DNA from: Octopus sinensis
Taxonomy: Eukaryota
Length of the DNA stretch: 64,000 nt
Assembly (NCBI RefSeq): GCF_006345805.1
Contig: NC_043009.1
Location: 52,824,001 to 52,888,000, forward strand
Direction of reading: 5' to 3'
In this document: positions 10,746 to 61,931 of the stretch, in pieces
How positions within the stretch are numbered: position 1 is the first letter of the stretch
Layout: each line of letters opens with the position of its first letter
Notes under the pieces: model-generated
The model's database searches: none
What the model was told of the DNA's origin: nothing
What the model saw: the letters and a program-made list of their open reading frames with translations, nothing else
Program-made: the position numbers and the translations under genes

Positions 10746-12855
10746 GCATGTATACAGGGTTAGCCAAAAGTAACCCAACAGTAAATGAAAACCATTTAAT
10801 TACGCGAGTAAAACAAAAAATTATTTTATATGAGACTTTGCTAATAAATAGACAAAGAATTCAATTATTAAACATTCATAATTGAAATGAATAAATAAAA
10901 TTAAATATTAAGTATTTATGGAATTTTGATTTAGGGTTGTGTGTATGTGTATCTATATATTTATATATAATCATCATCGTTTAACATCCATCTTCCATGC
11001 ATGCACAGGTAGGACAGTTCTTTCAACTTCCATGTACCAAATCCAATTCCAAGGCTTTGGTTGGTCTGGCGCTACAGTAGAAGATACTTATCAAAGGTGT
11101 CATGCAGTGGGACTGAATCTGGAACCAGGTATTTGGGAAGAAAACTTCTTGCCATGCCTAGAGCATATGTTTGTATGTGTGAAAGTGTACATGTGTGTTC
11201 CTGCATGCATGCAATTAGATATAAATGTTAATATTCCATGTTTGCCATTGCTTGAGTAAAATGGTGATGATGTAGACATTACTTCTTGGCATTATGCCCA
11301 GTCATTGTGAGCTTTCACAGACTTCTGCAATAAAAAACAAAACCTTCCGTTGCGTCTGGGGAGAGTCATTTTCTTTTTGTGCCTTATGATTTAACACACA
11401 CACACCAGTAAAATTTCCACTTATTTCTTATTTTTATTTTCCTAAAATTTTCGTTGCGTCTTGCAACCTTTTCAATAGTCTTGACTCTTGACTATTGAAA
11501 AGGTTGCAAGATGCAAAGAAAATTTTAAGAAATTAAAAATAAGAAATAAGTGGAAATTTTACTGGTGAGTGTGTTAAATCATAAGGCACAAAAACAAAAT
11601 GACTCTGCCCAGACACAACAGAATATGCTTCAACACACGAACTCATATAAAGCATCTTGCAAACCAAATCCAAAAACGGAAAAAACAAAATGTTCCTTGC
11701 TTGAAAAATAGGTATGGGTTAACAATAGAAAGAGCATCCAGCCATAAAACCTTGCTTCAAAGGAGTCATCAAACTGATGCCATGATGGAAAAACAGAAGT
11801 TAAACAAATGAATAAACAAACAAAAACGAAATCACTCACCGGTTCCAACATAACCAGCAGATCACATAAACACAGCCATTTCAGGTTAGCAGTTGGATAA
11901 AAGGCATGGAAACATCCGGTAAAAGTGTCATGGCATGCAGACAGGATTTCTTCGGCCATCTGCCGAAATTCGGGACTTGTTGGTGGGTTGGAGAGTGAAA
12001 GCCTAACTTTCGAAGGACGGACCTCTTCAGCAAGAATCTTGCGAAGCAAATCTCTGGAGTTGCCAACACCTTCAGCCAATTTCATGGTTTCTGGTATGGT
12101 TTTTTTGCTGACAGCTAAAATCAAATGAGAAAAAGTTTAAAAGCAATCAGTAAGAATTTTTGTTTTTTTTGTTTTAAAATCTTCAAAGTATTTTAACAAT
12201 CATTCAACATCCATGTTCCAAGTTGGCATGGGTTGGACAAAATGGGTACATAATGGGCTTCTTTTTTTTTTTTTTGAGGGGTGGAGGCAATTAGATAAGG
12301 GTGCTTGATACAGGGTTGTTTTATTAGGGTAACGTAAGTGGGACTAAAACCTTTATTGGGTGTGGGGGGAGTAAAGGAGGAGCCAATGAAGAAGATATGG
12401 CTACATTAGAACAATCTCAATTGCCTCCAACTCAGGTATACAACAAATGGAAAATATTACAGCAGTAACAGTAGTAGTAACAGCAGCAGCAAGAGTAATG
12501 GTAATAGTGACAGCAGGTGCAAGAGTAATAGTAGCAGAGCAACAACAACAAGAGTAGTACAGGGTGGTCCAAAAGTCACTGTAAGACTGCAATCTTTCAT
12601 TATTTACATTATTTACATTTGACGGATATTTGTCCCCATCTTGTTTATTGTTAATGTTTCACCTGATATATCCTCCAGCCTTCATCAGGTGTCTTGGGAA
12701 AATTTCGAACCCGGGTTCTCATTCCTAAGGTATTTTTCGATATTATCATCATTATTATTATTCAGGTCACTCCCTGGAATCGAACTCAGAATCTTGGGGT
12801 TAAGAGTGGAGGGCTACTAACCCCAAGATTCCAAGTTCGATTCCAGACAGTGATA

Positions 12856-12907
<52 letters not shown>

Positions 12908-15900
12908 CAACAACATAAAAAATACCTTAGGAATGCGAACCCAGGTTCGAAATTTCCCCAAGACACCTGATGAAGGCTGGAGGGTATATCAGCTGAAACA
13001 TTGTGTTAACAACAAACAAGATAATGATGATGAGCAGCAGCAGCAGCAGTAGTAGTTACAGCAACAGTAGGAGTAATGATGGTAGCAGGTGTTAGAGATC
13101 ATCATCATCATTACATTGATTTCATTAAGCTTCCAGATCTAGCTCAAATGGTCCCATGTGACATGCAGAGTTCTTGCGACAGATATTAGGACAACATGAA
13201 CAACTGACAGTATAGAGTACCAAAGCAGAGATCATAACAAAATTAGGACAAAACATAAGCAGTAGGTAATATGAAGTAATTAGGGCAGAAGTAGTATAGA
13301 AGTACTAAAGTAGAGATGAGGTACTGCATCACAGTTTAGGACAATGTTAGGTAAATAGAGACAGCAGATAGATAGCATGGGGGGTACACATATTAGGACG
13401 ATATTTCAGAGTGGCTGGTGTGGAGTACCATGCATGAGGGAAAAGTATCACTGCATACAGATGAAGATATAAACTGGGATTAGAAATTTTACTTAATAAA
13501 GAGAGAGAAATAGTAGAGAAAGAAAGAGTAAGAGAAGAAAAAAAAAGAAAAAACTAGTAAGACAGAGCAGGAGGCTGAGAGGAGAAAGAGAGAGATGAGA
13601 GTTGGAATGAGAGAAAGATGGGGAGTGCATACCTCCATCAGAGAACACCTCATTAATGTAAATTTTAATGAGACGAAGGCAAGCTTTGCAGATGTAGACA
13701 AATCTTTGGAGATCGGAGACTAGTGCTGAACGGCTAATTCCTTTCAGTCCGTCAAGTTCAGCAGCGGAAGAATGGAAGGAAGACCACGCCCACTCCAAGA
13801 GATTTAATAAGGCATCGAAGCAACTCTGAAAAAGTAATTAATAAATTCAGTAATTATTTAATTAGAATAGTTTTTTAGAGTTTGCTGAATTAAGAAAAAG
13901 AAAAGAAAGATTTTTGTAGAAAATGACAATAAGTGCACGAAGCTAGTTTCTAACCATATATTACTGAAGTAACTGGACCCTAACTAAGGCACTGGTAAAA
14001 AAAAACAAAAAACAGATAGAATGAATACACACAAGATTTCTGAGAGCAGCACTTAATATCAAACGGTAATCCCATACAACAAATCACACTAAAGTTTCCA
14101 CCACTTCACAACAATCCTAATAATAAAAATAATAATAATAATGATAATGCTTTCAAATTTTGGCACAAGGTCAGCAATTCCAAAGTATTATCAGACTATG
14201 GATAACTAAATTACAACAGGTATATAGTCCACATTTTGTATTATAGGGCATTGTTGTACCATTCAAAACTTTTTATTCTTTACAAACAATACACAATGCT
14301 TCAAGAGAACGACAAGACACTCCTAATAATAATAATAATTGGTACAAGGCCAGCAATTTCAGGGAGGTGTGTAAGTTGGTTGCATCGACTTCGGTATTCT
14401 ACTGATACTTATTGACCCCCAAAAGGATGAAGGGCAAAGCTGATCTTGACAGAATCTTAACTCAGAATGTAGCAATGGGTGAGATACCACTATTTCGTCA
14501 AGCATGTAATAATTCTGCCAGATTGCCGCCTTTAATAATAATGATAGTAATCATCATTGTTTAATGTCCGTTTTCCATGCTAGCATGGGTTGGGTGGTTC
14601 GACCAGGATTTGGGAAGCCAGGAGGCTGCACCAGCCTCCAGTCTGATTTGGCAGTATTTCTACAGCTGGATGCCCTTCCTAACGCCAACAACTCTGTAAG
14701 TGCAGTGGGTGCTTTTTACATGCCATCAGCACAAGGGCCAGAGGATGGCTGGCAACGGCCACGATCAGTTAGAGCTTTTTATGTGCCACCAACACGGAAG
14801 CCAGTCAAGGCGGCGCTGACATTGGCCACATTCGGATGGTGCTTTTAATGTGCCACCGGCACAGGTATCACATTGACAATTTCCATTTGATTTTGATTTT
14901 GATGTTGATGTACTTGACTCAATAGGTCTCCTCAAGCACAGTAGGCTGCCCTATGATCCAAGGTAAGCACAGCAAGTCGTCCTGCGATCCAAGGTACTTT
15001 TGAATGGGCTGGTAATGCGAAACTGGTGCAGGATACAGCCGTGAACTCACTTTATTTGTCAGGTCTTCGCAGTCACAGCATATCTCCAGAGGTCTCGGTC
15101 TTTCGTCATTGCCTCTGTGAGGCCCGACATTCGAAGGTCATGCTTGACCACCTCATCCCATGTCTTCCTGGGTCTACCTCTTCCCTGGATTCTTTCAACT
15201 GTTTGGGAGTGGAACTTCTTCACACATCTCTCCTAATCCATCCATAGTACATGACCATACCAGCGCAAACATCTCTCTTGCATGCCACATCCAATGCTTC
15301 TTATGTCCAACATTTCTCTCAGGGCGCTTACACTCTGTCATGTGTGCACACTTACATTACACATCCAGCAGATCATGCTAGCTTCATTTCTTTTGAGTCT
15401 ATGCATGTCCTCCGCAGTCACAGTCCATGTTCCACTGCCGTGAAGCATGGCAGTTTGCACACATGCATCATACAATCTACCTTTTACTAAACTTTACCCA
15501 GGCTATACTTATTCTTGTGGTAACACTCTCTGAGCATCCACTCCAACTACTAACTTGGTCCCCTAGGTAGTAGAAGATATCAACTACTTCTAGTTTCTTC
15601 CCCTGGAGTGTGATGGAATCTGTTTTCAGAGCATCTGTGGTGTTTATTGCCCCTGTGCATCTGCTGCATACGAAAGCTATCTTCTCGGTTAATAACTTAT
15701 GATAGAAGTACAAGACTAGCAATTTTTTTAAGAAAGGACTTGATGCATGGTCAGTTCAATCAGTAGCAACCTAGTATTAAACAACAGTGTGATTCTCACA
15801 GTGAAGGAGCATCACCATGGGTCAACAGGAGAACTTCTACATGGTTGCTTCATCTGCTAAATGTAGCAACCAAATCTACCAAAATCACATCCTATCATTT

Positions 15901-17330
15901 CTAAAGACACATTGACTAATGTAGTTGACAGCGACTGACGCTGGCAGCGACTGACGTAGGCAGCGACTGACGTGGGCAGCGACTGACGCTGGCAGCGACT
16001 GACGCTGGCAGCGACTGACGCTGGCAGCGACTGACGCTGGCAGCGACTGACGCTGGCAGTGACTGACGTAGGCAGCGACTGACGTAGGCAGCGACTGACG
16101 TGGGCAGCGACTGACGCGGGCAGCGACTGACGCTGGCAGCGACTGACGCTGGCAGCGACTGACGCTGGCAGCGACTGACGCTGGCAGCGACTGACGCTGG
16201 CAGCGACTGACGCTGGCAGCGACTGACACTGGCAGCGACTGACGCTGGCAACGATTGACGTAGGCAGCGACTGACGCTGGCAGCGACTGATGTGGACAGT
16301 GACTGACATTGTCAGTGACAGCAACAACAAAGATACACTTACAGGTGATACAGTTCTGCTGAAGTCTTGAGTTAATATATGAGCAGGCTCTAAATGTTCA
16401 GCTTTTCGAGGAATTGACTGTCTGTCTGGTGATGGTAATCTGAAGAAGGAAAAAAGAACAACAATAACAATAATAATTGGGCCTAATATGGTCAGAAACT
16501 TTGAAAGGAAGAGGATTAGTCTCAACATTGTGATAGGTGCAAATGGGCATCATTACCATAATAGAAGCCGTTACTTATTTTTAACAATATTCTGCAAAAT
16601 TGTATTTGGTCATAAGGAAATATCACCTTGCTTGGAAACAGGTGAGGGTCAGTGACAAAAAGGTCATACACATATAGAAAAACTACAGCAATAAACTCCA
16701 TCTGACCCATACAAGCATAGAAATGTAGACGTTAAAACAATGATGATGATGTTGCACAGATGACCATACAAACTGTGAAGATGTCATCCTTTAAATTTGC
16801 TTTAACTCAAGTTTGGCTAAGACAGATTACAAGTTTGTAAGGAGCTTAAAAGTAGAAACAGAAAAGGATGAGAAAAGGGATTAAGAGAAAAAAAATTTCA
16901 ACCAACCTGTAAAGTAACTGCGGGATCTGTCCAGCATTCACATCGGTTCCATTGTTGGATTTCTTTGAACTCTTGAATTTAAACACCACTCTATGTAACA
17001 AGAGATACAAAGAAAGTCATGAATATAAAACGGAAGGCAATAATTTATGCACTTTAAGTCAACAAATCTTTTTATCTTTCTTTAAATTTTTCTTTAGAAA
17101 TTATTATCATCATCATCAATATTGGCAAACAGAATCATTAGCACACTGGACAAACTGCTTAGAAGAATTTCTTCCAGCTTTGTCTTCTGGGTTCAAATTC
17201 CAACAGGCCTGACTTTGCCTTTCAAGGTTGACAAAATAAGTACCAGTTGAGCACTGGCGGGGATCAATGTAATTGCCTAGTCCCTTTCCTTAAAGTTTCA
17301 TGACTTGTGCCTACAGCAGAAAGAATTATC

Positions 17331-17362
<32 letters not shown>

Positions 17363-19766
17363 CTTTTTTTTTTCTTCTTCTTTCAAATTTGCTTCCATTT
17401 CTTGCCAAATGTCTTCCCGACTCCTAGGGCAAAGAAACTCATAGTATACATTGGTAGGCCATTAAACTAAACTCACTAGTTCGTTAATTTTTTTTTTTTT
17501 TTGATAGAAATAAAGTTATTATTATTATTATTATTATCATTATTATTATTATAATAATAATAATAATAATAATACTATAAAACTGAGAGAGAGAGAGATT
17601 GAAAATTGCTTGGCACTATTTCTTTAGACTCATTATGTTCTGAGTGCAAATTCTACAGAGGTTAACTTTACCTTTCCTCTTTGCGAGGTCAATAAAATAA
17701 AGTACCAGTTGAGCAGTGGGGTCAATTTAACAGACTAGGCCTGATATATTTTGGCATCTGCCATGTAGCACCACTGATTTGGTGCAAAGTTATTTGATAT
17801 CCAGATGTTATGTTTTCATGTTTCCCTTGCTCTCTGTTTGTTTCTGGGCATATTTCTCTGTGTGTCTGAGGAGAGGGAAAGTGATTTCCTCAAATGTTTT
17901 CAATTAATAAATTGTAATGTCTCTCCCCCTCGTGGTCTGCCTGTGTTTATTTTTGCAAGTGTCTGTGTCTGTCTCCAGCACCAAAATGTACTGTCGCCAA
18001 AACAGTCTAAATGTCCAGTTAACCATGCCAAATTGTCAGTCTCCAAACTACTGCACCAAATCATTTTATTCCATAATTGACTGACTACTTGCCCTTAAAT
18101 CCTTCTCACATCACCAATCTAACTATTACTGTAACTCTTATGTGATAGCTGAGGATTTATTCTGTAACTAAGCATTCATCAGGAAACTAGAATCGACCTC
18201 ATGTCAACCAAGCAGACAGAAGCAAGTGCAGTTATGTATTTTTCCCAGCAGCACAAGAATGTATTGCATTAGCAGCAGCAATATGTTTGAATTTCAGATA
18301 CTTCAATACTAATCTGATACTTAAACCATGCAACCATTGGCTCCAACACCACCAGCTTTTGAGAGGCAATAGACTTTTTTTTTAAAGACACTTTAGGTAA
18401 GTTATGTGGTTTTAGAATCACTGGCAGTGCAAAATTAAAAAATGGAAAAAAATTCAGTGGTGATCATGCTTGGGATCAAATGTCTCCTGAATCAGAGTTG
18501 ACCAGGAGTTAATCAATCAATAAATCAATGCAAATACTCACTGATCTTCTGTAGTGACAACAGCCTGCCCACTTGATCCACAGTCACTACTTGGTCCAGA
18601 TATCCTAGCCCAAGCCACATACCATATATTAGCCTGGAGAGATACTGGCTCATAAAATAACATTGCATAGGTTTCTCTGGAAAACAAACAAGAAATGGAA
18701 TAAATTAATCTTCACAAAGGTAACAAAATCTGCTTAACATATATCTATATCTACTGACCTGTCTCTCTGTCTAAGCATCTATCTAGCTACTCACTTGTTG
18801 TGTGTGTGTGTGTGTGTTTATTCATATATAAATATTCTTCATTCCTATAGTCCACATTATCAATAACAATATTTATCTCTCATTGGAGCCACCATAATTT
18901 TAACACCTTGGAAGAAAACAAAACGACTTACCTGGCAGCACATTCAAACGGAATTTCTTCAGTTTCTGCTAACAGAGTTCCATCTTCTTCCTTGTCAGCA
19001 CCATCAAAGCCAAGTTCAAACAGCTGTATGAGACACACAGACACATAGATCAATGGTTCAAATAACAAACAGTCAGGACAGAAAATCAAAAAACAAACAA
19101 GCAGGACAGAAAATCAAAGATTGAGAGATTTGGGTGGATGTCTGTGTGTGTACACAACTAAGACATAAATATGTAATTTAACTTGCATCAACCTTACACT
19201 CACATTCACAGGTTTATGTAATGAGTTTAGTCTTTGAGCTTCATAGGCTCCTGACTACTCTCAATTTGTATTATGTATATATTTTTCTAATTTCATCACG
19301 TATTATGCTGCATACACCTCTTGTTTCTTTGATCAACTCTTAGATTTTAGAAATAGATTTTTCCTCACATGCAAACTTTGAGTGCATTCAATGAATCTTG
19401 TCCAATAAGAAATCATACATTTAAAACAACATGCCAACCAGTCAGTGCCACATGCCATCATCATCATTTAACGTCCGCTTTCCATGCTAGCATGGGTTGG
19501 ACGGTTCAACTGGGGTCTGGGAAGCCCGAAGGCTGCACCAGGCCAGTCAGATCTGGCGGTGTTTCTACGGCTGGATGCCCTTCTTAACGCCAACCACTCC
19601 GTGAGTGTAGTGAGTGCTTTTTATGTGCCACCGACACAGGTGCCAGACGAGGCTGGTGAATGGCCACGCTCGGATGGTGCTTTTTACGTGCCACCAGCAC
19701 GGAGGCCAGGCGAGGCTGGCAACGGCCACGATCGGATGGTCTTTGTTACGTATATATGTATGTGTG

Positions 19767-19853
<87 letters not shown>

Positions 19854-19907
19854 GTGTATGTGTATATATATATATATAATATATATATATATGTATGTGT
19901 GTGTATG

Positions 19908-19969
<62 letters not shown>

Positions 19970-22900
19970 CATGTTCCATGCTTGCATGGGTTAGACAAAA
20001 ATGTTTTTCAGTGCCTACTGGAATCATAATCCAGACACACCATAAATTGTGCAGACATGCTAAACACTAAGGCAATTGTCATTTTATTCATTCTTTCACT
20101 CATTCATCCATTCATCCATCCATTCATACATACATGTTTTGTGCATGTGTGTAATTGCACACACAATTACAGAGAAAGAGAGTGAGAAATGGTAAAGTGT
20201 AATGCATAAATGAAAATCAGAAGAATTCCTTTTGTTATTTGTTGCAGATTGCAGAAGAGATGGAAAAAGAAAGAAAAATGTTTCAGTTACAAGCATGTGA
20301 AGTAAGTATCTTTAATGACAGGACGGGCATCTGACTGTAAAGCAATGCTTTAGTAATATTTATTCGTCTGACCTTTACTACCACTGCAAAATAGACAATA
20401 TAATGGAACAAAATATCAGAATGAAAATTGTATTTTTACCATTCAGCTGGTCATTATATTTCTTGACCATCCAACACTGACATCAACAGATCAGCTGTCC
20501 TCTATTATAATGACCATCACTACTGGCATTTCAAGTTTACCAGGTCACTATGTAACTGACCACTAATAACTGATATCTACTTATTGCTAATGTATATGTA
20601 ATAAACCCTTAAAGAGAGAGCCCCAGGATGACCACAGTCCAATGACTGAAACAAGAAAAGGATAAAAGATAGATAGTCCTCAAAAACATTTAGTCATGGG
20701 ACCCCTAGGCTAATCCCTGCTTTGATAGTGAAAGTGGGCTTAACTCTAGCATTTAATCTAGCCATTTCTGGTCCAGATATTCTCCTGGCTTTATGTTAAA
20801 ACTGAGCAGATCCAATGTCTCACACCTACCCTACAAGGTCATTCTAAAAATAAACAACCACATCATAGAAATTGTGAAGCTATGAGAAAATGCATGATTA
20901 ATTCAAAACAATGTGAATAAATAAGGTTTACATTTGAAAAAGAAATCTGAATGGTCAAGAGTTAAAGTTGTATTTGTATGGCCTATTCTATCCATATCAG
21001 ATACCATAAGCATCCACATAAATCTTTGGCATTGCTAGCTTTCCATACTATGTGATTTTGGCACTGCTAGGTTTCCATACTTTGCGATTTTGGCGCTGAT
21101 GGCTCTCCATACTTTACGATTTTGGCGCCGATGGCTCTCCATACTTTACGATTTTGGCGCCGATGGCTCTCCATACTTTACGATTTTGGCACCGATGGCT
21201 CTCCATACTTTACGATTTTGGCACCGATGGCTCTCCATACTTTACGATTTTGGCACCGATGGCTCTCCATACTTTACGATTTTGGCACCGATGGCTCTCC
21301 ATACTTTACGATTTTGGCACCGATGGCTCTCCATACTTTACGATTTTGGCAACGATGGCTTTCCATACTTTACGATTTTGGCAACGATGGCTTTCCATAC
21401 TTTTCGATTTTGGCACCTATGGCTTTCCATACCTTTCGATTTTGGCACCGCTGGCTTTCCATACTTTCTGTGATTTTGGCATTGCTAGTTTTCCATACTT
21501 TCTGTTGGTCTCATTTGCAAACTTAAATCTTAAATATACATTAACTATATGAAGATATGATCTACTGGTGGTCAGTAATGTAGTGACTTTTTTTTTTAAA
21601 AGACTTATTTTAGCAGATGAACGTTTAAAGTTGTCTAATTTCTTCTTCTGTTTGTTGGCAGTATCTAATAAAAGTCAATGAAATCCGCACAAAGAAAGGA
21701 GTCGATCTACTACAACATCTAGTTGAATACTACCAAGCTCAAACCACGTAAGTCTCAATTTCATTTCCCATCACTTTGATGACATGCACTGCTCTCTCAC
21801 TCAATAATAATAATTTTTTTTTCCTGATGTACTCCATCAATATAAACATTTTATCAATGAATAAAACTAAATAATTTTAATTATAACTCCCACTCACACA
21901 AACACACACATTCATTGAAAGCTGAGTGTTCATTTGAACAAGTGCACATAACAGGAAACTCGGAGTAATGACAGTGTGAATGATCACTTCTAAGTGTATA
22001 AAATACATTCTACTACATGAATTGAGCACTCTTTCTAATGTTTGTACATCAATATACAGACAGATAGATAGAATCTTTATAACAAGTTTCCAAAAGTTAA
22101 AGACAGAAAAACAAGGGACTATATAATTTTATTTCCCATACCACTCAGATGCTATGTAAGAGCTAAATACAAGTGCCAAATTTTGTTTCAATCACGAAAA
22201 GTATGTTGCATCAGAGAATTTCTGTAATCTTTTACTAAAATCTAATCGGAGTCGATTAAATAAGTACCAGTTACACACTGGGGTCAATATAATCGACTTA
22301 ATCCGTTTGTCTGTCCTTGTTTGTCCTCTCTATGTTTAGTCCCCTGTGGGTAATAAAGAAATAAGAAAACAGCAATAGTTTAAGTAAATATAGAGTATCT
22401 TACCTTGATTCGTCCAAAATATTCTCCACGGCCTCCAAACAAGCCAAAGCCACCCAATAGTATATCGGTGTCAGACATAAAGCGAATAGCTTCAACTGAA
22501 TGGCCCGAATAACCCCAACCACCTCCATGACCTGCAGCAGACAAATAAATAAGGAGTGTTCTTAATAAGGACCACCAATGGTGGAAGGTAGGCAGGAGAA
22601 GTGCAGCAACAACAAACTGGAGCTTTCGTAACAACAAAAAAAAAGATTCATAGAGAGAAGTATTAAGATGGAGAAAAGAAAGAGAGAGAGTAACTTACTA
22701 TCAAATCTGTTAATAATTGAAAAGTCTTCTTTGGTGTAATCCTTGGTGGCCGCCCTCTTCTCCTTCGTCTCTTCGTACACCACCAAGTGTAGCTGTTGGG
22801 CAGTGGTCAATGTATCGAGACAAGCTACAAGTAGACACAAATACAAGAACACACATGAAGATAATCAACCAAATATTATGTACATATGTTTACTATTTGT

Positions 22901-25171: not shown

Positions 25172-28100
25172 TACATACATACACACACACACATACATAC
25201 ATACATACATATATACTTACCAAGCATGTGCAATGAACAATGTGACCTTGTGGAATAGGAACTAGCTCTTGTAGGTATATACATTTCGGGACTGAGGATG
25301 TTACAGAAGCTGGAGTCGATGCTGTAAAGAGGACGGGCCTCAGGAAGCAATACCATGTAGCAATTGATCAAATTCTTGCTGGGAGAATAACTGAAATGGA
25401 TACAAAGTCAGAAGTTCAGTAAACACACAAAACAAAAAAAAGAAAAACCTTATTTGATGAGATATTGCAAGGAAACTAGAACAGAACCAGAATGACAGAA
25501 CCTATTGTCCTTTGGTTTTGCAAACAAACGAGATTTTATAATTAACAATGTAATTAATTCCGAACCAGAAAACACTTCATCAGGTGGTGGATAGTCTTTT
25601 ATAAGGATACTACACAAGCATTGGATTAAATTACTATTTTCTTCTACAGATCTGTCACTGGTAAGTGATTAAGCAATTATCTGTGTGATAATTATCATAC
25701 AACATACACATGTGTTAAACATGTGGAAAGATTATATAATCTTTATAATAAAGAGTTTGAGTAAACCACCTATTGTTTAGCTCTCAAATACATGTATACA
25801 TGTGTGTGTGTGTGTGTATGTATATATATATATACACACACACACATATACAGTGTACTCAATGTATAAACTGTATATACATATCCATACTGTACATACA
25901 GTAAAAATATTTACATATAGGTATATATTTACAGATATACAAATTCATATTGTACATATAGTATAAATATTTTGTAAATGCATTTTTCATATATATATAT
26001 AGGTATTCTCATATGCCACTCACCTCCAAAGAGTGTCATACACTGGATCTAGACATACAGCATGGTGAAACAGGTTTTCTTGATCAGCCGAACTGAAACT
26101 GAAATGAAAGTAACAAAAGAGTTAGCTTTAGTTTTTAAATTTTCTGTTTTTTTTTTTTTTCAAATTGCTTCTTTTCATAATGAAAGAGAATTGTGGAAAT
26201 GTATTTTCAAGCAATTTTTTTCTTCGCAACTAAATCTCTTCTCACTCGTCACTAAGCACTTAAATGTCAGGGGGAAGTGGAAGCAGTTGTCTGCGAACAT
26301 ACTGAAGCAAATAAAAAATGTCTTACCCAGGAAGTTTAAATAAATAAATAAATAAGCCGTTTATCATTACTGACTCAGAAAAGTGATAGGCAACAATCGA
26401 GCCTAATTCGATTAAGAGATCAGATTACAGTTTAATGAAAATCATTGTGGGGGCCATGCTAGGCTAAAAATCAGAACAGAAAGAAGAGAGAGGTAATGGT
26501 TGAACCTGGCAGGACCAAAGATCAACATCAAGAGCATACAGAGGTAAAGCTGAGCCTAGTAAGGACTGAAGATCAAAACAAGGGAGAAGCAATGTCGAAC
26601 CTGAAAGGACTAGAGATCAAAGTGCAGTGAATAGAGAAGCAATTATGAGTCTGGCAGGATGGAAGACGATAAACACAGAGAAGGGAGAAGCAATATTGAG
26701 GCTGAAAGGACTGCAGATCAAAATACAGAGAATCGAGATGTAATGTTGAATCTGGCAGGTCTGAAGATGAAAACACAGAGAAGGGAGAAGCAATACTGAG
26801 GCTGAAAGGACTGCAGATCAAAATACAGAGAATCGAGATGTAATGTTGAATCTGGCAGGTCTGAAGATGAAAACACAGAGAAGGGAGAGGCAATATTGAG
26901 GTTGACCAGATCAGAAGTGAGAATCTAAAACAATAGGACCTGATACAGTAAGGCATACAGTCCAACCATGTGATTCTATAACTCCACTGCCACAGTAACT
27001 CTGCCAGAATCCTTTGTGTCTATTTCAAGAGATGAGAAGATAAATTTATTGATAAGATTGATGTAGACTGTTTTAATAAGAATTTTCAATAATAGAACAA
27101 AGCAACTAGTTTGGGGGAAAAGTTTCATTCGAGTGAAACATTCTCAGAATTTGGAGAGCATTTAGTTCATCAATCAAACTGGAGGAGAGTATAAGAAGTT
27201 GATCTCTGAAGGATCAGAACTCAGAGTATGAAGGAAAATAATGCTAAGCAGTTATTCCATCATTCTACTGTTTCTACATACCACAGACTGTAACAATTTG
27301 TGAAAACAATTCATTTCTAACACAGGCACAAAACCAGTTATTTAGCAAGAGGAGAACAGTTGATTTCATCGACCACACTACTTGACAGAGACATTTTGTG
27401 ATCTAGAAAGGATAAAAAGGATAAAGGGTGAAGTTGTCTCCAGCAGGATTACTCGTAACTAAATATCACAAGATGCTTTAACCCTTTAGTATTTAAACTG
27501 GCCATATCCAGCCAAAATATTTAAACTGTTTTATGTTCAAACTGACCAGATCCAGGCTCTCACACCTACCCTACAATGTTATTCTACATTAGGTAATTAC
27601 ACCATCAAGATCTTGAAGATATGAGATAATGCATGATTAATTCAAATCAATGGGAATCAATAGGCATTATGTTTGATAGAATAATCTGAACACTAAAGGG
27701 TTAATGATACTGCCAGTTCATCATCCTTGTAATAATAATGCTTTATTTCTCTGATTTCTAACAAATTTCAAAGTAAAGGAATATATAGTTGACAAATCAA
27801 TCTCGTTTGAACTGGAAATCAGAAAAATGACGACAAAAATGTTAATATGCTGCAATTTATTTTTAGGCAAACGACTAATATGTGTAATTTTTCTTTTCCC
27901 ATATTCTTAAATCTAGAAGAAAACTTATAATGGAATCCACCCAAATACATAACTGATACTTATTTCACTAACCATCCCAGAAGTAACTGTCAAGAAGGCA
28001 TCATAAATCTGATTTAACAAGACCCTTAATGATAGTAGCTATAAATACCATAACAGCATGGACAGTGAAAAGATTTTAGACAACTGTTGACAACATCTGG

Positions 28101-29253: not shown

Positions 29254-31492
29254 TATATGGTTCAAAATTAAACAAAAAAAGACAAACACAGCATGCTCAA
29301 CTCATTTATTTCCAGTCTTCATATATCCTCCACATTCAAAACCTGGGTTCAGAACCCTGCAACATGTCACCTCATTCACAAACATTATGCAATCTGCCCT
29401 TCACTCAGTGAAAGACTATTTTTGCAACCAGCAGAAGTAAAAAATCCCAGAACAATTTTCACTCTGTCTTTACTCCGGCTACTACATCTTCCTTCACTCC
29501 TAATTCTTTCTACTATAAGCACAAGGCCTCAAATTTTTCAGGGTGGGTTTAATCAATTGCATTGACCCCAGTGCTGAACTGATATTTTATTTCATCAATC
29601 CTGAAAGAGTGAAAGGACAAGTCAACCTCACTGACATCTGAACAGAGAATGCAAAGAGCCAGAAGAAATGCCAGAAAGCATTGTGTCCAATGTGGTGAAG
29701 ATCTGGCCAGTTCACTGCCTTTCCTCCACTGCAAAACAAGCCACATAGGCAACAGAAGCTGTAAATTACTTACAGGAAACATTCAAAACATCTCAAAGAA
29801 TTTATTTTATGGTTACTCTTAAATTTGCTGTATACAAAGTATTTCTTCCCTGTCAGCCTGTCTGTGATCCTGCAGCATTCCTTGTGCACCCGGTTTAGAA
29901 TTAGATCACAACTCCTCCAGAATTCTTATCTAATATCTCTCATCACATATCTAATAATTTTTGGCATACTGGACACAGCCACCTCCTTGACAGTAGAAGA
30001 GTTCTGTCCTGTTTCTTGTTAATTTATGCCCCTCCATTCTAGACTTTGTCACATGATTGTAAAATATTCTTTAATTCATCATCATCATCATCATCATCAT
30101 TTAGCGTCCGTTTTCCATGCTAGCATGGGTTGGACGGTTCAACTGGGGTCTGGGGAGCCCGAAGGCTGCACCAGGCCAGTCAGATCTGGCAGTGTTTCTA
30201 CAGCTGGATGCCCTTCCTAACGCCAACCACTCCGAGAGTGTAGTGGGTGATTTTATGTGCCACCGACACAGGTGCCAGACGAGGCTGGCGAACGGCCACG
30301 CTCGGATGGTGTTTTTATGTGCCACCGACACAGGTGCCAGACGAGGCTGGCAGACGGCCACGCTCGGATGGTGTTTTTATGTGCCACCGACACAGGTGCC
30401 AGATGAGGCTGGCAGGTGCCAGACGAGGCTGGCAGACGGCCACGCTCGGATGGTGTTTTTATGTGCCACCGACACAGGTGCCAGATGAGGCTGGCGGACG
30501 GCCACGATCGGATGGTGTTTGTTACGTCCATCCGATCGTGGCCGTCCGCCAGCCTCATCTGGCACCTGTGTCGGTGGCACATCTTCTTCAAATTTAGATA
30601 ACAAGAATCAAGTCATTCTTACAGAAGTTCCCACTCCTCCGTTATGGTTTGAAGAACTGTAATATACAGAAAGTGGTAGAAAATCAGCCCAGACAGGCAC
30701 ATCCCTGCATGCCTGATTTCTTGCTGACTTCATTGCTCACTATTATCGTGCTGACAGCATCCCTGTTAATGGCTTGCATGACTGCCACAAGCCTTGTATC
30801 TGAAGCTAATTTTCTTAGTACCAAAATGACTACAGAGCATGGTAGTTTGTCTGCCATGTCAGCTATCTTCTCCAGGTCAACGAATGCTAAGTGTAGTGGT
30901 TTACCTCTCATACCACACCTCTCTACTCATGCATTTCAACAACCACCTTTCATCATATCTTCATTAATGTTGGCAACAATGAAGTTCTGCAGCTGATAGG
31001 AAGAACAAATTTTTGGCAGTGGATAGGTTATACAGAAATACAGGCCAACACACATATTAAGTGATACATTCACACACGCACACACACGCACAGACAATTA
31101 TACATACATAGTGCGCAACAAGCCTGCTAACACAATGATAAATGGAACTCACCAATACAAGATTGATTGGCAAAGATGTTACAGCTAGTGAGTGTGTGAG
31201 CATTGATCAAAGATTCATCAATTCTCATGTACGTCTGATCACCACTGGCACCAATCCAAGTGGAACGGCGACCGTATCGAGCACCTGCAACACAAGCAGA
31301 AGAAAAGAATTTTGTCTTAATACATAAGTGAATTCATAAATATATATATATATATACACACACACATATATATATATACACACATACGTATATATATATA
31401 CACACATACATATATATAAATACACACACATACATATATACACACACACATATATATATACACACACACACATATATATATATACACATATA

Positions 31493-31771: not shown

Positions 31772-32375
31772 TGCATATATATAAATACACACACATGCAT
31801 ATATATAAATACACACACATGCATATATATAAATACACACACACATATATATATACACACATACACACACATATACACACACACAAACACACACACATAC
31901 ATACATACATACAAGTGTACATGCCTACACACACACACATCTCATAGCGCTTATACATGCTATTATGTACAGTAATGCCACAAAGTTTAAGTGAGTCTCT
32001 CAGCAAGTCTGAATGAAAACTGAACACATTAGTTGGTTGGATTTTCATTCCAACTTATTGAGAGCTTAGCAGCTGAAGAGCAGAGTCTGCTTTCATAGTA
32101 AAGCTAAATATATCTTTTATCTGTCTCGGTCAATAAACTGCAACCATATTGGGGCACCATCTCGAAGAACTTTTAGTCAAATGAATCAACCTCAGTATTT
32201 CTTTTTTTTTTATTTTCTTAAGCCTTGTACATATTCCATTCATCGATTTTTGCTGAACCACTAGGTTACAGGGATGTAAACAAACCAACACCAGCTACCA
32301 AGCAGTAGTGGGGGACAAACACAAGGCCAAAAACACATACACACGTGTGTATGTATGTATATATATTTATACATA

Positions 32376-32414
<39 letters not shown>

Positions 32415-33034
32415 TATATATACACACACATGCATATATATAAATACACACACATGCATATATATAAATACACACACATGCATATATATAAATACACACA
32501 CACATATATAATACACACACACACACACATATATATACACACACAACACACACACATACATACATACATACAAGTGTACATGCCTACACACACACACATC
32601 TCATAGCGCTTATACATGCTATTATGTACAGTAATGCCACAAAGTTTAAGTGAGTCTCTCAGCAAGTCTGAATGAAAACTGAACACATTAGTTGGTTGGA
32701 TTTTCATTCCAACTTATTGAGAGCTTAGCAGCTGAAGAGCAGAGTCTGCTTTCATAGTAAAGCTAAATATATCTTTTATCTGTCTCGGTCAATAAACTGC
32801 AACCATATTGGGGCACCATCTCGAAGAACTTTTAGTCAAATGAATCAACCTCAGTATTTCTTTTTTTTTTATTTTCTTAAGCCTTGTACATATTCCATTC
32901 ATCGATTTTTGCTGAACCACTAGGTTACAGGGATGTAAACAAACCAACACCAGCTACCAAGCAGTAGTGGGGGACAAACACAAGGCCAAAAACACATACA
33001 CACGTGTGTATGTATGTATATATATTTATACATA

Positions 33035-36100: not shown

Positions 36101-39100
36101 TGATAACTGCCACACGTATACACTTGGCCATTTGCTAGTAATATCACTGTATGACTGCTTCCAGCTGCCACTTGGACAGCTGATATTGGCAACAGGACTT
36201 TGGTAGGTACACCTCTGTAACAATAAGATACACCATTTCAAATTGAGGATTAATTTCATTAATTAATTAAAAAAAAAAGACCCCCATAAAAATGCCCAAT
36301 GAAGAGAGTCTAGTATGTGTATATGTATGTAAATATGTGTGTGTGTGTATGTGTAGTGATGTGTACAAGCCATATATAAAGAGTGAATGAAAGATTACAA
36401 AACAATATAATGAGGTAATGTGTGTGTGAGTTTGCATAAGCAAGTATGCATACATGGTGCCATCAGGATATGAATATACTGGGTGGTTGCTCAGAGCCTG
36501 CCCATGAGTTTAAAGGTCCAACACTAATCTATGTATGCAGTTTTGATGTCTGTAGGTGCCCCAGCACATTGCTTTACCAAGGGGCCTATAATGCAGTGAA
36601 GACAGATCTATATAAGTATGTATCCATATACATTTGTATTTGTATACATACAGAAATATTTGAACTGGCATAGGCATGGCTGTGTGGTAAGGAGCTTACT
36701 TCCCAACCACATGGTTCCAGGTTCAGTCCCACTGCGTGGCACCTAGGGTAAATGTCTTCTGATATAGTCTTGAGCTGACTAAAGCCTTGTGTGTGGATTT
36801 GGTAGAGGGAAACTGAAAGAAACCTGTCGTATATAGCTATGTGTGTGTGTCTTTATGTGTGTTTGTTCCCCCACTACAGCTTGACAGCTGGTGTTGGTGT
36901 GTTTACATCCCCATAACTTAGCGTTTTGGCAAAGAGAGGACAATAGAATAAGTACCAGGCTTTAAAAAAAAAAGACCTGGGGTTGATTTGTACAACTAAA
37001 ACCCTTCAAGATGGTGCCCCAGTATGGCCACAGTCAAATGACTGAAACAAGTAAAAGAATAAAAGATATAGAAATGCATGTTTGGATTCAGAAGAGAGAG
37101 AGAGGGAGAAAGAAATAGTGAGAGTTTAATGAGAAAGTCCCTTACCGTACAGCAACATCTCCGACACCAAGTTGACCGTATTGGTTGCTACCAAAAGTAT
37201 ACACATCACCATTCTGAAGCAGTACCACTGAAGATGTAAAACAAAACATAGTTTTAACAATAGTAGTAGTAGTAAGCGAGAAGAAAGAATTTTAATATGT
37301 TCATATAAAAACAGACTCTACCAAATGATAGCAACATCACGATAAATCTCTTCCCAAGCATATACAAAGGAGAAAATATTTGATATTTTTTGATAAAAAT
37401 AACTAAATCTCCTTTAAAATACACCTTACAGCCTCAAGGATGGACGCATTACACGATGTAGTTCTAGATACTCCATAGCTGAGAAAATAAAAGACGCACT
37501 GTTTATGACTAAAAAAAATCTATGACAATAAGTCTATTTTATCAGTAATGATATAGAGTTAAAGAACAGCAGAAAATTGCAGGAAACTCATAGATCCTTC
37601 TGCTCAACATGGGTTCAAAAAGGCCCTAGGTCATGTCTATGCAGAGAAGGAAAAGGTAGACACCTATATCATAGGTGTCTACAAAGGGTTTCTATGTGAC
37701 AGCTGACAACCATAAATCAGACCAGAGGCTGGAGCAAAGAACCAGCAAAATGGAAGGTGACATGATGGCGGAATGATACAATACATACAGCTCAAACAGC
37801 TAACAGACAGGAAAGGTAAAATGTAAGTGCACAACAAGGAACAAATACCAGGTTATTAGAAGAGAAAATAGACATCTGGTGTACTTGATTACGAGAGAAA
37901 CTCTAAGTAAGGGGTTTACCAATGTTCTACAGCAAGAGCATAGGGAACATGAAGTGTTCAAGATTGCAAAGCTGTATGGCTGTGAAGCCCAGGTATAACT
38001 GTGCAGTTAAGAAGCCTGATTTCTAGCCATGTGGTCTCAGGTTCAATGCCACTGAGTGGCACCTTGAGCAAGTTCCCTCTACAATAGCCCTAGGCTGAGT
38101 GAGTTGATTTATCATCATCATCATCATCGTTTAACGTCCACTTTCCATGCTAGCATGGGTTGGACAATTTGACTGAGGACTGGCGAACCAGATGGCTGCA
38201 CCAGGCTCCAATCTGATCTGGCAGAGTTTCTACAGTTGGATGCCCTTCCTAATGCCAACCACTCCAAGAGTGTGGTGGGTGTTTTTATGTGCCACCGGCA
38301 CGAGGGCCAGTCTTGCAGTACTGGCAATGGCCAGAAACTGAAAGACACTTGTCATGCGTGGTTTTCACACTTGTGATATTATACGATGCCTGTAAACAAT
38401 TATCACCTGTTGTGCAAGTGGTGCTGTTTGTTTCCAGTCTTTGGTGAAAAACATATTTGGTCATGGGGAAATAAAACATTACCTTTCCTGAAAACAAGTG
38501 AGGGTTGACAACAGGAAGGGCATCTGGCCATAGAAAAAATCTGCTTCAACAAAAATCCATTTGACCCATGAAAGCATATAAAAGTTAACATTGATGATGA
38601 TCACACACACACAAATCAGGTTACGTCCCATCCAGCTTCAGTGCAGTCAAAGAGAACACACCTACTACTCACTGTCTCCAAATGTATGGATATCAGCCTA
38701 TTAATCTTACAAAAAATGATGATTTAACAACTAAAATACACTTTTTCTCAAGGGTTTTAAACCCAAAATTGATTTAGCAAAAGACCACCATCATTACTTT
38801 CAGTTTGAAGTCAAGGAAGGAGTTGTGGCATAACCATTTACCATGCTAGAAATAGAAGCCAAAGTGAGTAAACAGTGGAACATGACACAATCTCTTGTCA
38901 AACCAACCAACTCATGCCAGCATGGAAAATGGATGCTAAATGATGATGATGATCTATGCTCTATCTACTTCTAATCATGTCCTACCGTGGCTTACAAAAA
39001 AAAAATATATATTTTGAACAGTATAGTCTCTTCTGAGACACAGAAAAGAGAAAAGATGCGACTGTCACATTTTGAACACTTTTGATCACAAGTCTGCTGG

Positions 39101-42100
39101 TTTAGGTCAGACCTGAAGTTAAACAACAACAACTAGTTTTTTTTTTTGTTTGTTTGTTTTTTTTTTACCTGAAGTATGTTATGTAAAACTTCACATTATC
39201 AATAATTATGCTAAATAGATATTAAACCACTAACCTGTGTGATGCTGTCCACAAGACACATGTGTGACTGGAATATCACCGTCACCAACCAGAATTTCAG
39301 CAGGTGGAAGACTAACCATTTTTGAATAGTCTGTTTCCAGTTCATCAACTTCACCTGCAAAAGAATAAAAAGAAATGAGAGAATTTATTTTATATAGCTT
39401 CTTTAACCATGATAATGTGAATAAAGCATGTTGAAATTCTATATTTTTGGTAATCCATCCTTTACAGTAAGCTGGGGTTGTTTTTTTTTTGTTTATTTTT
39501 TGTTGTTTTTTTTTAGTTGAACCTCTTCCAGTAACTTACGAATTTCAGTAATTTCTCAAGCATCTTATTCAACATGCTGAGTAAAACTGAGGTCAGTGAA
39601 TAATAAAAATCCTGTCACTCAGCTCTCACTACATATGAGTGGCATCACTCATTCTCGCACGTTCCCATAAACAGTTCCCTGGTTTGCCAGATCTTGTCAA
39701 ACTATCCAACTCATGCCAGCATGGAAGATGGACATTAAATGATGATGATGATTAGCAGTGCTTTTTTTCAAAACAGCTGGAATACCAGAGCTCAACAACA
39801 ACAACGGATCCTAAATCGGCAGTCAAAGAAAGCTGGCAGGGTGAGGGGAAGATTCTATACCTCTACTTCCACCCGTAAGTAAATCACAACAGTTTACCTC
39901 GAAATTTGATCTGCTTCATTCCTTTGCTTTTCGACTTTGGAACACGCTCAACTTTCTCGATTCGTTTTCCAATCTGCTCGAGAGGTTTCACACCGGGACG
40001 TCCTCCTGAACAGACAAAACAAAAAAAAAAAAATGATTACAATGAAATGAAGAATGAATGAAAAGATAATCATAACACTAACAAGAAGTTACAACAACAC
40101 ATCAAAATGCAAATGTGTTGATATTATACAAGTGGAAAGGTGCATGGCCGAGATGTTAAAATTACTGGGATTGTAATCATAATGTCAAGGGTTTGGTTCC
40201 ATATCCGGACGGTGCAATGTGTTCTTGAACAAGGGACTACATTTTGCCTTGCTCAAGACAAGTCTATTCAGCTGAAAATGTGTATCAGCCGAGTGCTGGT
40301 TCTGATCGATTTCTCCCTTGCTGTGACACCCTCAATAATCTGCCAAGTCAAAGGTAAGAGGGTCAAGAGGATGTGTCTGCACATGATTGCTGCATAGGCA
40401 CCATAACCAATTAGGAAAAGGATGGTATCTGCCAATAAGTCGTTCTCACTCATGAGCAACAAGTCTAGAGTGTGTTTGTAAGAGTATCAGTGTGTGTGTG
40501 TGTGCATGTATGTGCAGACATTTGTGTTTTTGTGTGCATGTGTTTGTGTAAGTGTGTGTGTGTGTTTAATTTTTTAAGTTATACAGGGATAGTGCCCAGG
40601 ACTTTTGCAAGTCTTCCAGGAGATCAATGTCATTGAAACTCAATTCATGATGTGTGTGTGTGTGTAGACAGTATGTAAAAATATAGATTATGAAAAAATA
40701 GTACTTTATACAGAGACAGAAAGAATAATAATTAGACAAAGGGTCTGGCTCAGAGACAGAAGTAGATATATAGATGGATAGAGAGATACACAGGTACTGC
40801 AAAAATGCATTGACAGATACTAGGACGCATAACACAAAGACATATCTGCAGAGACACATAAACAAACATACAGAAAGAGACAGAGATGGAGAGACAGACA
40901 GATGAACAGACAGACATATGGACAGACAGATGTATGAACAGACAGACAGACGTATGAACAGACAGACAGACGTATGAACAGACAGACAGACGTATGAACA
41001 GACAGACAGACGTATGAACAGACAGACAGACGTATGAACAGACAGACAGATGTATGAACAGACAGACAGATGTATGAACAGACAGACACATGAACAGACA
41101 GACAGACACATGAACAGACAGACAGACAGACACATGAACAGACAGACAGACAGACACATGAACAGACAGACACATGAACAGACAGACAGACAGACACATG
41201 AACAGACAGACATACACATGAACAGACAGACAGACATACACATGAACAGACAGACACATGAACAGACAGGCAGACACATGAACAGACAGGCAGACACAGG
41301 AACAGACAGACGGACACAGGAACAGACAGACAGACAGACACATGAACAGACAGACACATGAACAGACAGACAGACAGACACATGAACAGACAGACATACA
41401 CATGAACAGACAGACAGACACATGAACAGACAGGCAGACACATGAACAGACAGGCAGACACATGAACAGACAGGCAGACACAGGAACAGACAGACGGACA
41501 CAGGAACAGACAGACGGACACATGAACAGACAGACAGATGCATATGAAGAGACAGACAGACAGACAGACATACGAGTCGAAAGACAGCTAGACAGAGGTC
41601 AGATAAAGAGATGCGACAACATACCGGCTATGAGATCGTATGAAACAGGATGGTCGGGTTTGTTGGAGACGTCCTTGAGACCTCGGTCATTCAGTTGGTC
41701 AGATATTTCGCTCTCCCCTGCACAACTTTTGCATGCACCACATTCTGCACAGCCTGAATCCCCAGCACCGCAACCACAGGGTCTGTTTGATAGAAGAGGG
41801 TAGAAAGGAATATACAGATTGCAAAAGTAAGCGATACTAGCAGAATATTAAGGCGGCGAGCTGGCAGAACTGTTAGCACGCCAGGCGAAATGCGTAGGCG
41901 TATTTCATCTGTCGCTACGTTCTGAGTTCAAATTCCGCCGAGGTCGACTTTGCCTTTCATCCTTTCGGGGTCGATAAATTAAGTACCAGTTACGCATTGG
42001 GGTCGATGTAATCGACTTAATACCTTTGTCTATCCTTGTTTGTCCCCTCTATGTTTAGCCCCTTGTGGGTAGTAAAGAAACAGATACTAGCAGGAAGAGA

Positions 42101-61929: not shown

Positions 61930-61931
<2 letters not shown>

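What the first reader, a model, noticed from the sequence alone, without database searches (positions are those of the whole stretch)
20248..21747. Two intact ASAP-family (BAR-domain) exons hidden antisense inside a MYCBP2 intron
Seen: two plus-strand segments with strong acceptors and GTAAGT donors splice in phase to [46 protein letters not shown] with no stops. Established (recalled): this matches the ASAP1/2 ArfGAP BAR domain, about 37/46 identical to human ASAP1. The 1360-nt intron between them is retained (MITE, SINE tail, 32-bp minisatellite), so this is not a retrocopy. I found no flanking ASAP exon (TKIEKEK... before, FFQDG... after) in the 20 kb upstream or 42 kb downstream. Inference: (a) a live ASAP gene interleaved antisense with MYCBP2 through giant introns, (b) a DNA-level duplicated/captured two-exon fragment, or (c) a misassembly.
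Basis: partly seen in the sequence, partly recalled or inferred. Interest (0 to 1): 0.88.

Follow-up and report, generated by a model that had tools for sequence, protein, structure and literature searches.

The report
Stray ASAP exon pair inside MYCBP2
Two intact exons of the membrane-trafficking gene ASAP sit alone, on the opposite strand, inside a short intron of the ubiquitin-ligase gene MYCBP2; they are most likely a small copied gene fragment, and less likely part of a working ASAP gene threaded through MYCBP2, which only whole-genome and RNA data can settle.

Summary
Plus-strand exons 20248-20301 (54 nt) and 21662-21747 (86 nt) have strong acceptors and GTAAGT donors. Joined, they give 46 stop-free residues of the ASAP BAR domain (ASAP3 BAR, PDB 9jih, E 6e-10; 37/45 identical to vertebrate ASAP1). 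Their boundaries match, to the nucleotide, those of ASAP genes in four other animals.

The minus strand encodes MYCBP2. Four exons splice into a complete PHR1 domain (E 1.4e-76 to mouse MYCBP2). The ASAP pair lies in the 3380-nt intron between the first two of them.

Searches with human ASAP1, invertebrate exon peptides and 120 ASAP BAR proteins found no other ASAP exon in the 64 kb.

In other animals ASAP is compact and carries no MYCBP2 exons. In one other invertebrate the same MYCBP2 intron is about 130 nt and empty. The arrangement is therefore derived.

The window alone cannot separate the three origins:
- Young DNA-level partial duplicate: about 0.45. It needs only one copy-and-paste event.
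- Live ASAP gene interleaved through introns longer than 20 kb and 42 kb: about 0.3.
- Repeat-anchored assembly or gap-fill error: about 0.12.

No sequence from this species could be retrieved. Interest is moderate to low.

The parts
20248..20301 (+). ASAP BAR-domain exon A: 54 nt, phase 0 to 0, reading [18 protein letters not shown]. The acceptor is ttgttgcag and the donor is GTAAGT.
   Evidence: E 2.3e-4; E 1.5e-7. In L003 and L006 the exon is also exactly 54 nt, with an AG acceptor at the same position.
20302..21661 (+). Retained intron between the two ASAP exons, 1360 nt. Without the inverted-repeat-bounded block it would be about 316 nt.
   Evidence: The same intron position (E|Y) occurs in L001, L003, L006 and L009, with lengths of 75-622 nt.
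20544..21587 (.). Candidate transposon-like block bounded by a terminal inverted repeat (TIR). The arms are 58 nt and 78% complementary. Inside it are old TE fragments at 20603-20671 and 20744-20966.
   Evidence: (inverted repeat I2). The internal fragments are 74-90% identical to other copies in the window.
21038..21467 (.). 32-bp minisatellite, 13.4 copies, 94% matches.
21662..21747 (+). ASAP BAR-domain exon B: 86 nt, ending in phase 2, reading [28 protein letters not shown] plus AC. The acceptor is tgttggcag and the donor is GTAAGT.
   Evidence: E 1.4e-8. The exon is exactly 86 nt, with the same end phase, in L001, L003, L006 and L009.
19024..22403 (-). Host intron of MYCBP2, between PHR1 exons X and W, 3380 nt.
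   Evidence: One search gives the exon coordinates and splice sites. The orthologous intron in L011 is about 130 nt and has no ASAP exon.
22404..22538 (-). MYCBP2 PHR1 exon X, reading ...[43 protein letters not shown], with donor gtaaga. It lies 657 nt from the end of ASAP exon B. The 5' limit is approximate.
18931..19023 (-). MYCBP2 PHR1 exon W, reading [31 protein letters not shown], with acceptor catacag and donor GTAAGT. The 3' limit is good to within 2 nt.
18541..18675 (-). MYCBP2 PHR1 exon Y.
16903..16989 (-). MYCBP2 PHR1 exon Z.
19456..19998 (+). Left-hand repeat bracket of the ASAP-bearing DNA. It consists of a SINE-like element (19456-19745), a TA/TG microsatellite (19751-19967) and a 28-nt truncated second SINE head (19970-19998).
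22240..22368 (.). Right-hand repeat bracket: a fragment of a dispersed repeat that has at least 6 other copies in the window.

Best explanation
The two exons are a young, DNA-level partial copy of the species' real ASAP gene. I think a roughly 0.5-2.2 kb piece of ASAP genomic DNA (exon A, its short intron and exon B, with some flanking intron) was pasted in reverse orientation into a formerly short intron of MYCBP2, between PHR1 exons X and W. The fragment lacks every other ASAP exon, so it cannot encode a protein by itself. It is expected to be inert intronic DNA. At most, its intact splice sites could be used in occasional antisense non-coding transcripts.

Shown: the identity of the exons, their conserved structure, their isolation within 64 kb, the identity of the host gene, and that the arrangement is derived.

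Inferred: the copy-and-paste origin, the existence of a parent copy elsewhere, and the lack of function.
For: 1. The pair is isolated. Three independent, increasingly sensitive probe sets found no other ASAP exon in the 20 kb upstream or the 42 kb downstream. The next exon's motif, FQDGLKTIEHF, is nearly invariant in invertebrate ASAPs, so it would have been seen.
2. In four other animals the neighbouring ASAP exons lie 0.1-2 kb away, and no MYCBP2 exon is present in those loci.
3. In another invertebrate the same MYCBP2 X|W intron is about 130 nt and has no ASAP exon. The arrangement therefore arose by adding ASAP DNA to this intron. A duplicate needs one event. A live interleaved gene needs several.
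4. The neighbouring MYCBP2 introns are short: about 155, 255 and 1551 nt (coordinates). The X-W intron is 3380 nt, and most of the excess is the ASAP-bearing block plus repeats.
5. The intron between the exons is retained, so the copy was made at the DNA level and not through mRNA.
6. From memory, not tested here: young gene duplicates in animals are often short, partial and inverted (Katju and Lynch 2003, C. elegans, median span about 1.4 kb).
Against: The exons show no decay at all. There are no stops or frameshifts, both splice-site pairs are strong, and the consensus residue is kept at every column that is at least 85% conserved across more than 90 ASAP sequences. That fits either a working exon pair or a copy only about 1-2% diverged from its parent, so the duplicate must be very young.

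No parent copy could be shown, because no sequence from this species was available. No target-site duplication, poly(A) tail or inverted-repeat pair enclosing both exons was found that would point to a mechanism.
Confidence: 0.45

Rival explanations
1. These are the working exons of the species' only ASAP gene, which is interleaved with MYCBP2. ASAP would be transcribed from the plus strand across MYCBP2, with one intron longer than 20 kb before exon A and one longer than 42 kb after exon B. Each of those introns would contain ten or more MYCBP2 exons on the other strand. A variant of this reading: ASAP already spans MYCBP2, and this pair is an alternative, mutually exclusive copy of exons A and B.
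For: The exons are what a constrained orthologue should look like. Exon lengths and phases are identical to those in four other animals. Acceptors and donors are strong. Every residue is seen in functional ASAPs, and the consensus is kept at all highly conserved columns. The few rare residues (A16, Q43) also occur in ASAPs of other lineages. The window has no gaps.
Against: The ancestral state is a compact ASAP gene and a separate MYCBP2 gene. Moving just two internal exons into another gene's 3.4-kb intron while keeping ASAP spliceable needs several steps, or an earlier nesting of MYCBP2 inside ASAP. No other ASAP exon lies in the 62 kb that flank the pair, while MYCBP2 exons there are only 0.15-12 kb apart. 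Exons A and B together are 140 nt, which is not a multiple of 3, so a duplicated pair could only be used in a mutually exclusive way.
Confidence: 0.3
2. This is an assembly or gap-filling error. A read from the true ASAP locus was placed into the MYCBP2 intron because both ends of the block are dispersed repeats.
For: The unique ASAP-bearing DNA (about 20000-22240) is bracketed on the left by a SINE-like element, a microsatellite and a truncated SINE head (19456-19998). On the right it is bracketed by a fragment of another dispersed repeat (22240-22368). Both repeats have many copies in the window.
Against: There are no N runs anywhere in the window. The error would need two repeat-mediated switches that return to the correct next MYCBP2 exon, in the right order and orientation, within 3.4 kb. 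Almost all unique DNA in this genome is bracketed by repeats, so the bracket alone is weak evidence.
Confidence: 0.12
3. The fragment was captured by a transposon (Pack-MULE, Helitron or LINE 3'-transduction type). It would then be the cargo of a mobile element and present in several copies in the genome.
For: The block sits among repeats.
Against: The 25 longest of the 177 inverted-repeat pairs found in 19000-22450 include none that encloses both exons. The only non-microsatellite pair lies inside the A-B intron. There is no poly(A) tail or recognisable target-site duplication at the edges. The window holds only one copy, and the exon flanks 20000-20543 and 21588-22239 are unique in it.
Confidence: 0.05

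Closest known systems
ASAP1/ASAP2/ASAP3 (ArfGAP with SH3, ankyrin-repeat and PH domains), BAR-domain exons
   Same: The 46 residues align to the BAR domain of ASAP3 (9jih_A residues 178-222, E 6e-10) and to Pfam BAR_3 positions 154-197. They are 37/45 identical to vertebrate ASAP1. The exon lengths (54 and 86 nt) and phases equal those of ASAP genes in other animals.
   Different: Only about 46 of roughly 1100 residues are present. The rest of the BAR domain and the PH, ArfGAP, ankyrin and SH3 parts are absent from 64 kb.
Young partial (DNA-level) gene duplicates and gene fragments in segmental duplications
   Same: It is short, it retains an intron, it is truncated at both ends, it is inverted relative to the host gene, and it is undecayed.
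   Different: The parent copy and the boundaries of the duplicated block were not seen, so the fragment's status as a duplicate is inferred.
Nested and interleaved antisense gene pairs. Examples recalled from memory: the 'interleaved' class in the Drosophila release 3 annotation, and the OMG/EVI2A/EVI2B genes nested in an NF1 intron.
   Same: Exons of one protein-coding gene lie inside an intron of another gene on the opposite strand.
   Different: Known nested cases usually involve a whole small gene inside one intron. Here only two internal exons of a gene with roughly 28 exons (recalled from memory) are present, and the partner exons would have to lie beyond ten or more host exons on each side. 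No transcript evidence is available.
Processed pseudogene / retrocopy
   Same: It is an isolated piece of a gene away from its expected neighbours.
   Different: The 1360-nt intron at the conserved E|Y position is retained, with consensus splice sites and no poly(A) tail. It is not a retrocopy.
MYCBP2 / PAM / Highwire / RPM-1 (the host gene)
   Same: The minus-strand exons encode RCC1-like repeats and two PHR domains. PHR1 matches mouse MYCBP2 PHR1 (3gbw) at E 1.4e-76.
   Different: Only about the N-terminal third of the gene lies in the window. The host gene itself shows nothing unusual.

Membership tests
ASAP family (BAR-PH-ArfGAP-ANK-SH3) | Sequence match to the ASAP BAR domain | tested here: met
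   The match to ASAP3 BAR (9jih_A) has E 6.1e-10. The Pfam BAR_3 match has E 1.5e-6 at 28.5 bits, below the 31.7-bit cut-off because only 44 of 235 profile positions are present. Identity to invertebrate ASAPs is 80-87%.
ASAP family (BAR-PH-ArfGAP-ANK-SH3) | Conserved exon boundaries and phases of the gene | tested here: met
   The A|B intron lies at E|Y in L001, L003, L006 and L009. Exon B is 86 nt and ends in phase 2 in all of them. Exon A is 54 nt in L003 and L006.
ASAP family (BAR-PH-ArfGAP-ANK-SH3) | Rest of the BAR domain and the PH, ArfGAP, ankyrin and SH3 domains in the same transcription unit | tested here: not met
   None is found in the 64 kb window with three probe sets. Whether they lie beyond the window could not be tested.
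Interleaved antisense gene pair | Exons of gene 1 inside an intron of gene 2 on the opposite strand | tested here: met
   The ASAP exons lie in the MYCBP2 X-W intron, 19024-22403.
Interleaved antisense gene pair | Exons of gene 2 inside introns of gene 1, meaning that flanking ASAP exons exist outside the window and are spliced to this pair | not testable with these tools
   No sequence or RNA data from this species could be retrieved. No cephalopod ASAP transcript was among the listed hits.
DNA-level partial gene duplicate | Intron retained and copy truncated at both ends | tested here: met
DNA-level partial gene duplicate | A parent copy exists elsewhere in the genome | not testable with these tools
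   The species' genome is not in any searchable collection.
Retrocopy / processed pseudogene | Introns removed, with a poly(A) tail | tested here: not met
   The intron is retained at the conserved position, and no poly(A) follows exon B.
Transposon-captured gene fragment (Pack-MULE / Helitron type) | Terminal repeats or target-site duplication enclosing the captured exons, and multiple copies | tested here: inconclusive
   None of the 25 longest inverted-repeat pairs found in 19000-22450 encloses both exons. The window holds one copy. The genome-wide copy number is unknown.
MYCBP2 / PHR family (host gene) | An RCC1-like domain followed by two PHR domains | tested here: met
   PHR1 scores Pfam E 5.8e-45 and 3gbw E 1.4e-76. 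The first PHR2 exon scores Pfam E 1.8e-9. An RCC1 repeat scores E 1.7e-9. All homology hits are on the minus strand.

The most novel reading that the evidence does not exclude
These are working exons of the species' ASAP gene. ASAP and MYCBP2, two large and ancient multi-exon genes, would then be interleaved on opposite strands over more than 64 kb, with ASAP splicing across introns that each hold ten or more MYCBP2 exons. A variant is that the pair serves as a mutually exclusive alternative to an upstream A/B pair.
Probability: 0.3. Interest if true: 0.5.

Novelty: new member of a known kind. Interest (0 to 1): 0.3.

Why it matters
If it is a copied fragment, it matters mainly for annotation. 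Two perfect-looking ASAP exons on the antisense strand can mislead gene predictors into building chimeric or giant ASAP models across MYCBP2. The locus would also be a clean, datable example of a very young partial duplication in a repeat-rich mollusc genome.

If it is instead part of the live ASAP gene, it would be an extreme case of two essential, highly conserved genes sharing one stretch of DNA on opposite strands. That raises questions about transcriptional interference and about how such a layout could evolve from two separate compact genes.

Either way, the answer needs only a genome-wide search and stranded RNA data.

Tried and rejected
1. Looking for further ASAP exons in the window.
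- I used human ASAP1 (recalled from memory and used only as a probe), 23 exon peptides taken from two invertebrate ASAP loci and 120 ASAP BAR proteins.
- Only noise turned up. The hit at 26352-26426 has stops on both sides and no acceptor. The hit at 11505-11648 contains two stops and has E 0.015 for a single query among 120. Both were rejected as chance.

2. Finding this species or a close relative in the public collections.
- All three homologue searches returned only other animals, and none of the listed hits was identical or near-identical to the window across an exon.
- Exact look-ups of 11 window ORFs found nothing.
- The nearest relative recovered (L004/L005, Logan runs SRR30680066 and SRR30680078) shares MYCBP2 exon X at 78% nucleotide identity. 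Its contig ends about 275 nt past the exon, too short to reach where ASAP exon B would lie.

3. Checking synteny elsewhere. ASAP loci L001, L003 and L006-L009 carry no MYCBP2 exons. MYCBP2 locus L011 has no ASAP exon. L010 ends at exon X.

4. Looking for a transposition signature (inverted repeats, target-site duplication, poly(A) tail) around the pair. None was found.

5. Other checks.
- The Rfam scan of the window gave no hits.
- Two literature searches returned nothing relevant.
- The retrocopy reading is rejected because the intron is retained.
- A chance ORF is rejected on the E-values and the nucleotide-exact exon boundaries.

Full report
**What is there**

Reading the sequence confirms the finding as written.
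- Exon A is 20248-20301 on the plus strand. It is preceded by a pyrimidine-rich acceptor (ccttttgttatttgttgcag) and followed by GTAAGT. It encodes [18 protein letters not shown].
- Exon B is 21662-21747. It has acceptor cttcttctgtttgttggcag and donor GTAAGT. It encodes [28 protein letters not shown] and ends two bases into the next codon.
- Joined, the two exons give 46 residues without a stop. The intron between them is 1360 nt.

**Is it more than chance, and what is it?**

- A tblastn of human ASAP1 (written from memory and used only as a probe) against the window hits only these two places, at E 1.4e-8 and 2.3e-4.
- The joined peptide matches Pfam BAR_3 (E 1.5e-6, profile positions 154-197). 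It matches the solved BAR domain of ASAP3 (9jih_A residues 178-222, E 6.1e-10).
- Among ASAP BAR sequences returned from the protein collection it is 80-87% identical to invertebrate ASAPs. It is 37/45 identical to vertebrate ASAP1 sequences (P0195, P0203).
- I fetched genomic ASAP loci from four other, unidentified animals (L001, L003, L006, L009). The exon boundaries agree to the nucleotide. The intron between the exons sits at E|Y in all four. Exon B is exactly 86 nt and ends in phase 2 in all four. Exon A is exactly 54 nt in the two loci where its upstream intron exists.

These are therefore real ASAP exons and not look-alike ORFs.

**The other strand**

Minus-strand ORFs carry RCC1-like and PHR-like peptides. 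Four minus-strand exons cover the PHR1 region:
- X, 22404 to about 22538
- W, about 18931-19023
- Y, 18541-18675
- Z, 16903-16989

They splice into a 150-residue sequence. It matches the whole Pfam PHR model (E 5.8e-45) and mouse MYCBP2 PHR1 (3gbw, E 1.4e-76).

Mapping 120 MYCBP2-like proteins onto the window gives 17 exon blocks, all on the minus strand, from 3.8 kb to 47.7 kb. Further RCC1-type ORFs lie at about 39.3, 50.4, 52.0 and 53.8 kb.

The host gene is therefore MYCBP2. The ASAP pair lies in its X-W intron, 19024-22403, which is 3380 nt long. ASAP exon B ends only 657 nt from MYCBP2 exon X.

**Isolation of the pair**

I repeated the search with exon peptides from two invertebrate ASAP loci and with 120 ASAP BAR-domain proteins. 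The exon that should follow begins with a motif, (N/T)YFQDGLKTIEHF, that is almost invariant in invertebrates, so it would be easy to find. Nothing credible appeared. The two best leftovers contain stop codons and lack splice sites. If this is a live gene, its flanking introns exceed 20.2 kb and 42.2 kb. Each would contain ten or more MYCBP2 exons.

**Comparative context**

- In the other animals' loci the neighbouring ASAP exons lie 0.1-2 kb away, and no MYCBP2 exon is present.
- In another invertebrate's MYCBP2 locus (L011) the same X|W intron is about 130 nt and holds no ASAP exon.
- The ancestral state is therefore two separate genes, with ASAP compact. ASAP DNA was added to this intron in the lineage of the window.
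- The neighbouring MYCBP2 introns here are about 155, 255 and 1551 nt. The X-W intron owes its length mostly to the ASAP-bearing block and to repeats.

**State of the exons**

I tabulated each of the 46 positions across roughly 90-150 ASAP sequences. Every window residue occurs in some other ASAP. The consensus residue is kept at every column that is at least 85% conserved. The few rare residues (A16, Q43, M11, R27, K10) are conservative changes or occur in other lineages. There is no sign of decay.

The intron between the exons contains a candidate inverted-repeat-bounded block (20544-21587). That block holds old transposable-element (TE) fragments, 74-90% identical to other copies, and a 32-bp minisatellite. 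Without the block the intron would be about 316 nt, which is in the range seen in other animals (75-622 nt).

**Weighing the explanations**

A retrocopy is excluded, because the intron is retained at the conserved position and there is no poly(A) tail. Chance is excluded. Three origins remain.

1. A DNA-level partial duplicate of ASAP.
- It needs a single copy-and-paste event.
- It explains the isolation of the pair and the inflated host intron.
- Because the exons are flawless, it must be very young, roughly 2% divergence or less.
- I could not show a parent copy.

2. A live ASAP gene interleaved with MYCBP2.
- It explains the flawless exons directly.
- It requires a multi-step history from two separate compact genes, and two giant introns in a region where the host's exons are closely spaced.

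3. A repeat-anchored assembly or gap-filling error.
- The ASAP-bearing unique DNA (about 20000-22240) is bracketed by a SINE-like element, a microsatellite and a truncated SINE head on the left (19456-19998). A dispersed-repeat fragment lies on the right (22240-22368).
- The window has no gaps.
- Two switches that return to the correct next exon are unlikely.

I rate these at about 0.45, 0.30 and 0.12. Transposon capture is a minor variant at about 0.05. No enclosing inverted repeat or target-site duplication was seen, and the window holds a single copy.

**Limits**

Nothing retrieved came from this species. Eleven window ORFs are absent from the protein collection. None of the three homologue searches listed a hit identical or near-identical to the window across an exon. 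The nearest relative found (L004/L005) shares MYCBP2 exon X at 78% nucleotide identity. Its contig stops about 275 nt beyond the exon. The window alone cannot decide between origins 1, 2 and 3.

**Verdict**

The more exciting reading, a live interleaved gene, is possible but is not the most parsimonious one. The case belongs to known kinds: a partial gene duplicate, or an antisense nested or interleaved gene. A genome-wide BLAST and stranded RNA-seq would resolve it. Interest is moderate to low.

Noticed in passing
window 19456-19745 and at least 13 other places (for example 30089-30376, 14550-14845, 58077-58367, 38119-38310, 61252-61437, 61930-62116): A SINE-like dispersed repeat with a head reading ...ttccatgctagcatgggttggacgg. 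Copies are 73-92% identical. Nine copies are in plus orientation (antisense to MYCBP2) and five in minus orientation. The sample is too small to read as a transcription-orientation bias.
   Followed up: partly
window 19970-19998: A 28-nt truncated second SINE head sits directly after the TA/TG microsatellite and is followed by unique DNA. It could mark the left edge of an inserted block, or it could simply be a broken repeat.
   Followed up: partly
window 11505-11648 (+): A weak resemblance to ASAP exon B: [27 protein letters not shown] against [29 protein letters not shown]. It contains two stops and has E 0.015 for one query among 120. It is probably chance in K-rich sequence. A decayed older copy is not excluded.
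   Followed up: partly
window 15929-16307, 54137-54686, 40921-41562, 26580-26905: Large minisatellite arrays in MYCBP2 introns: period 16 (23.7 copies), period 16 (34.4 copies), period 20 (31.6 copies) and period 100 (3.2 copies). They create long spurious ORFs on both strands.
   Followed up: no
window 32070-32261 and 32729-32920: Two identical 64-codon ORFs lie 659 nt apart, each next to a TA/CA microsatellite. This suggests a recent local tandem duplication of about 0.66 kb.
   Followed up: no
window 43722-44204 (-) and 52394-52618 (+): Related ORFs that look TE-derived, sharing ...[13 protein letters not shown](R/H)TLSY.D...[19 protein letters not shown].... They are probably remnants of a retroelement. 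They were not scanned against domain libraries.
   Followed up: no
L011 1313-1443 compared with window 19024-22403: The MYCBP2 PHR1 X|W intron position is conserved between the window and another invertebrate, but its length differs about 26-fold (about 130 nt against 3380 nt).
   Followed up: yes
whole window: No Rfam family reaches its gathering score on either strand. There are no N runs.
   Followed up: yes
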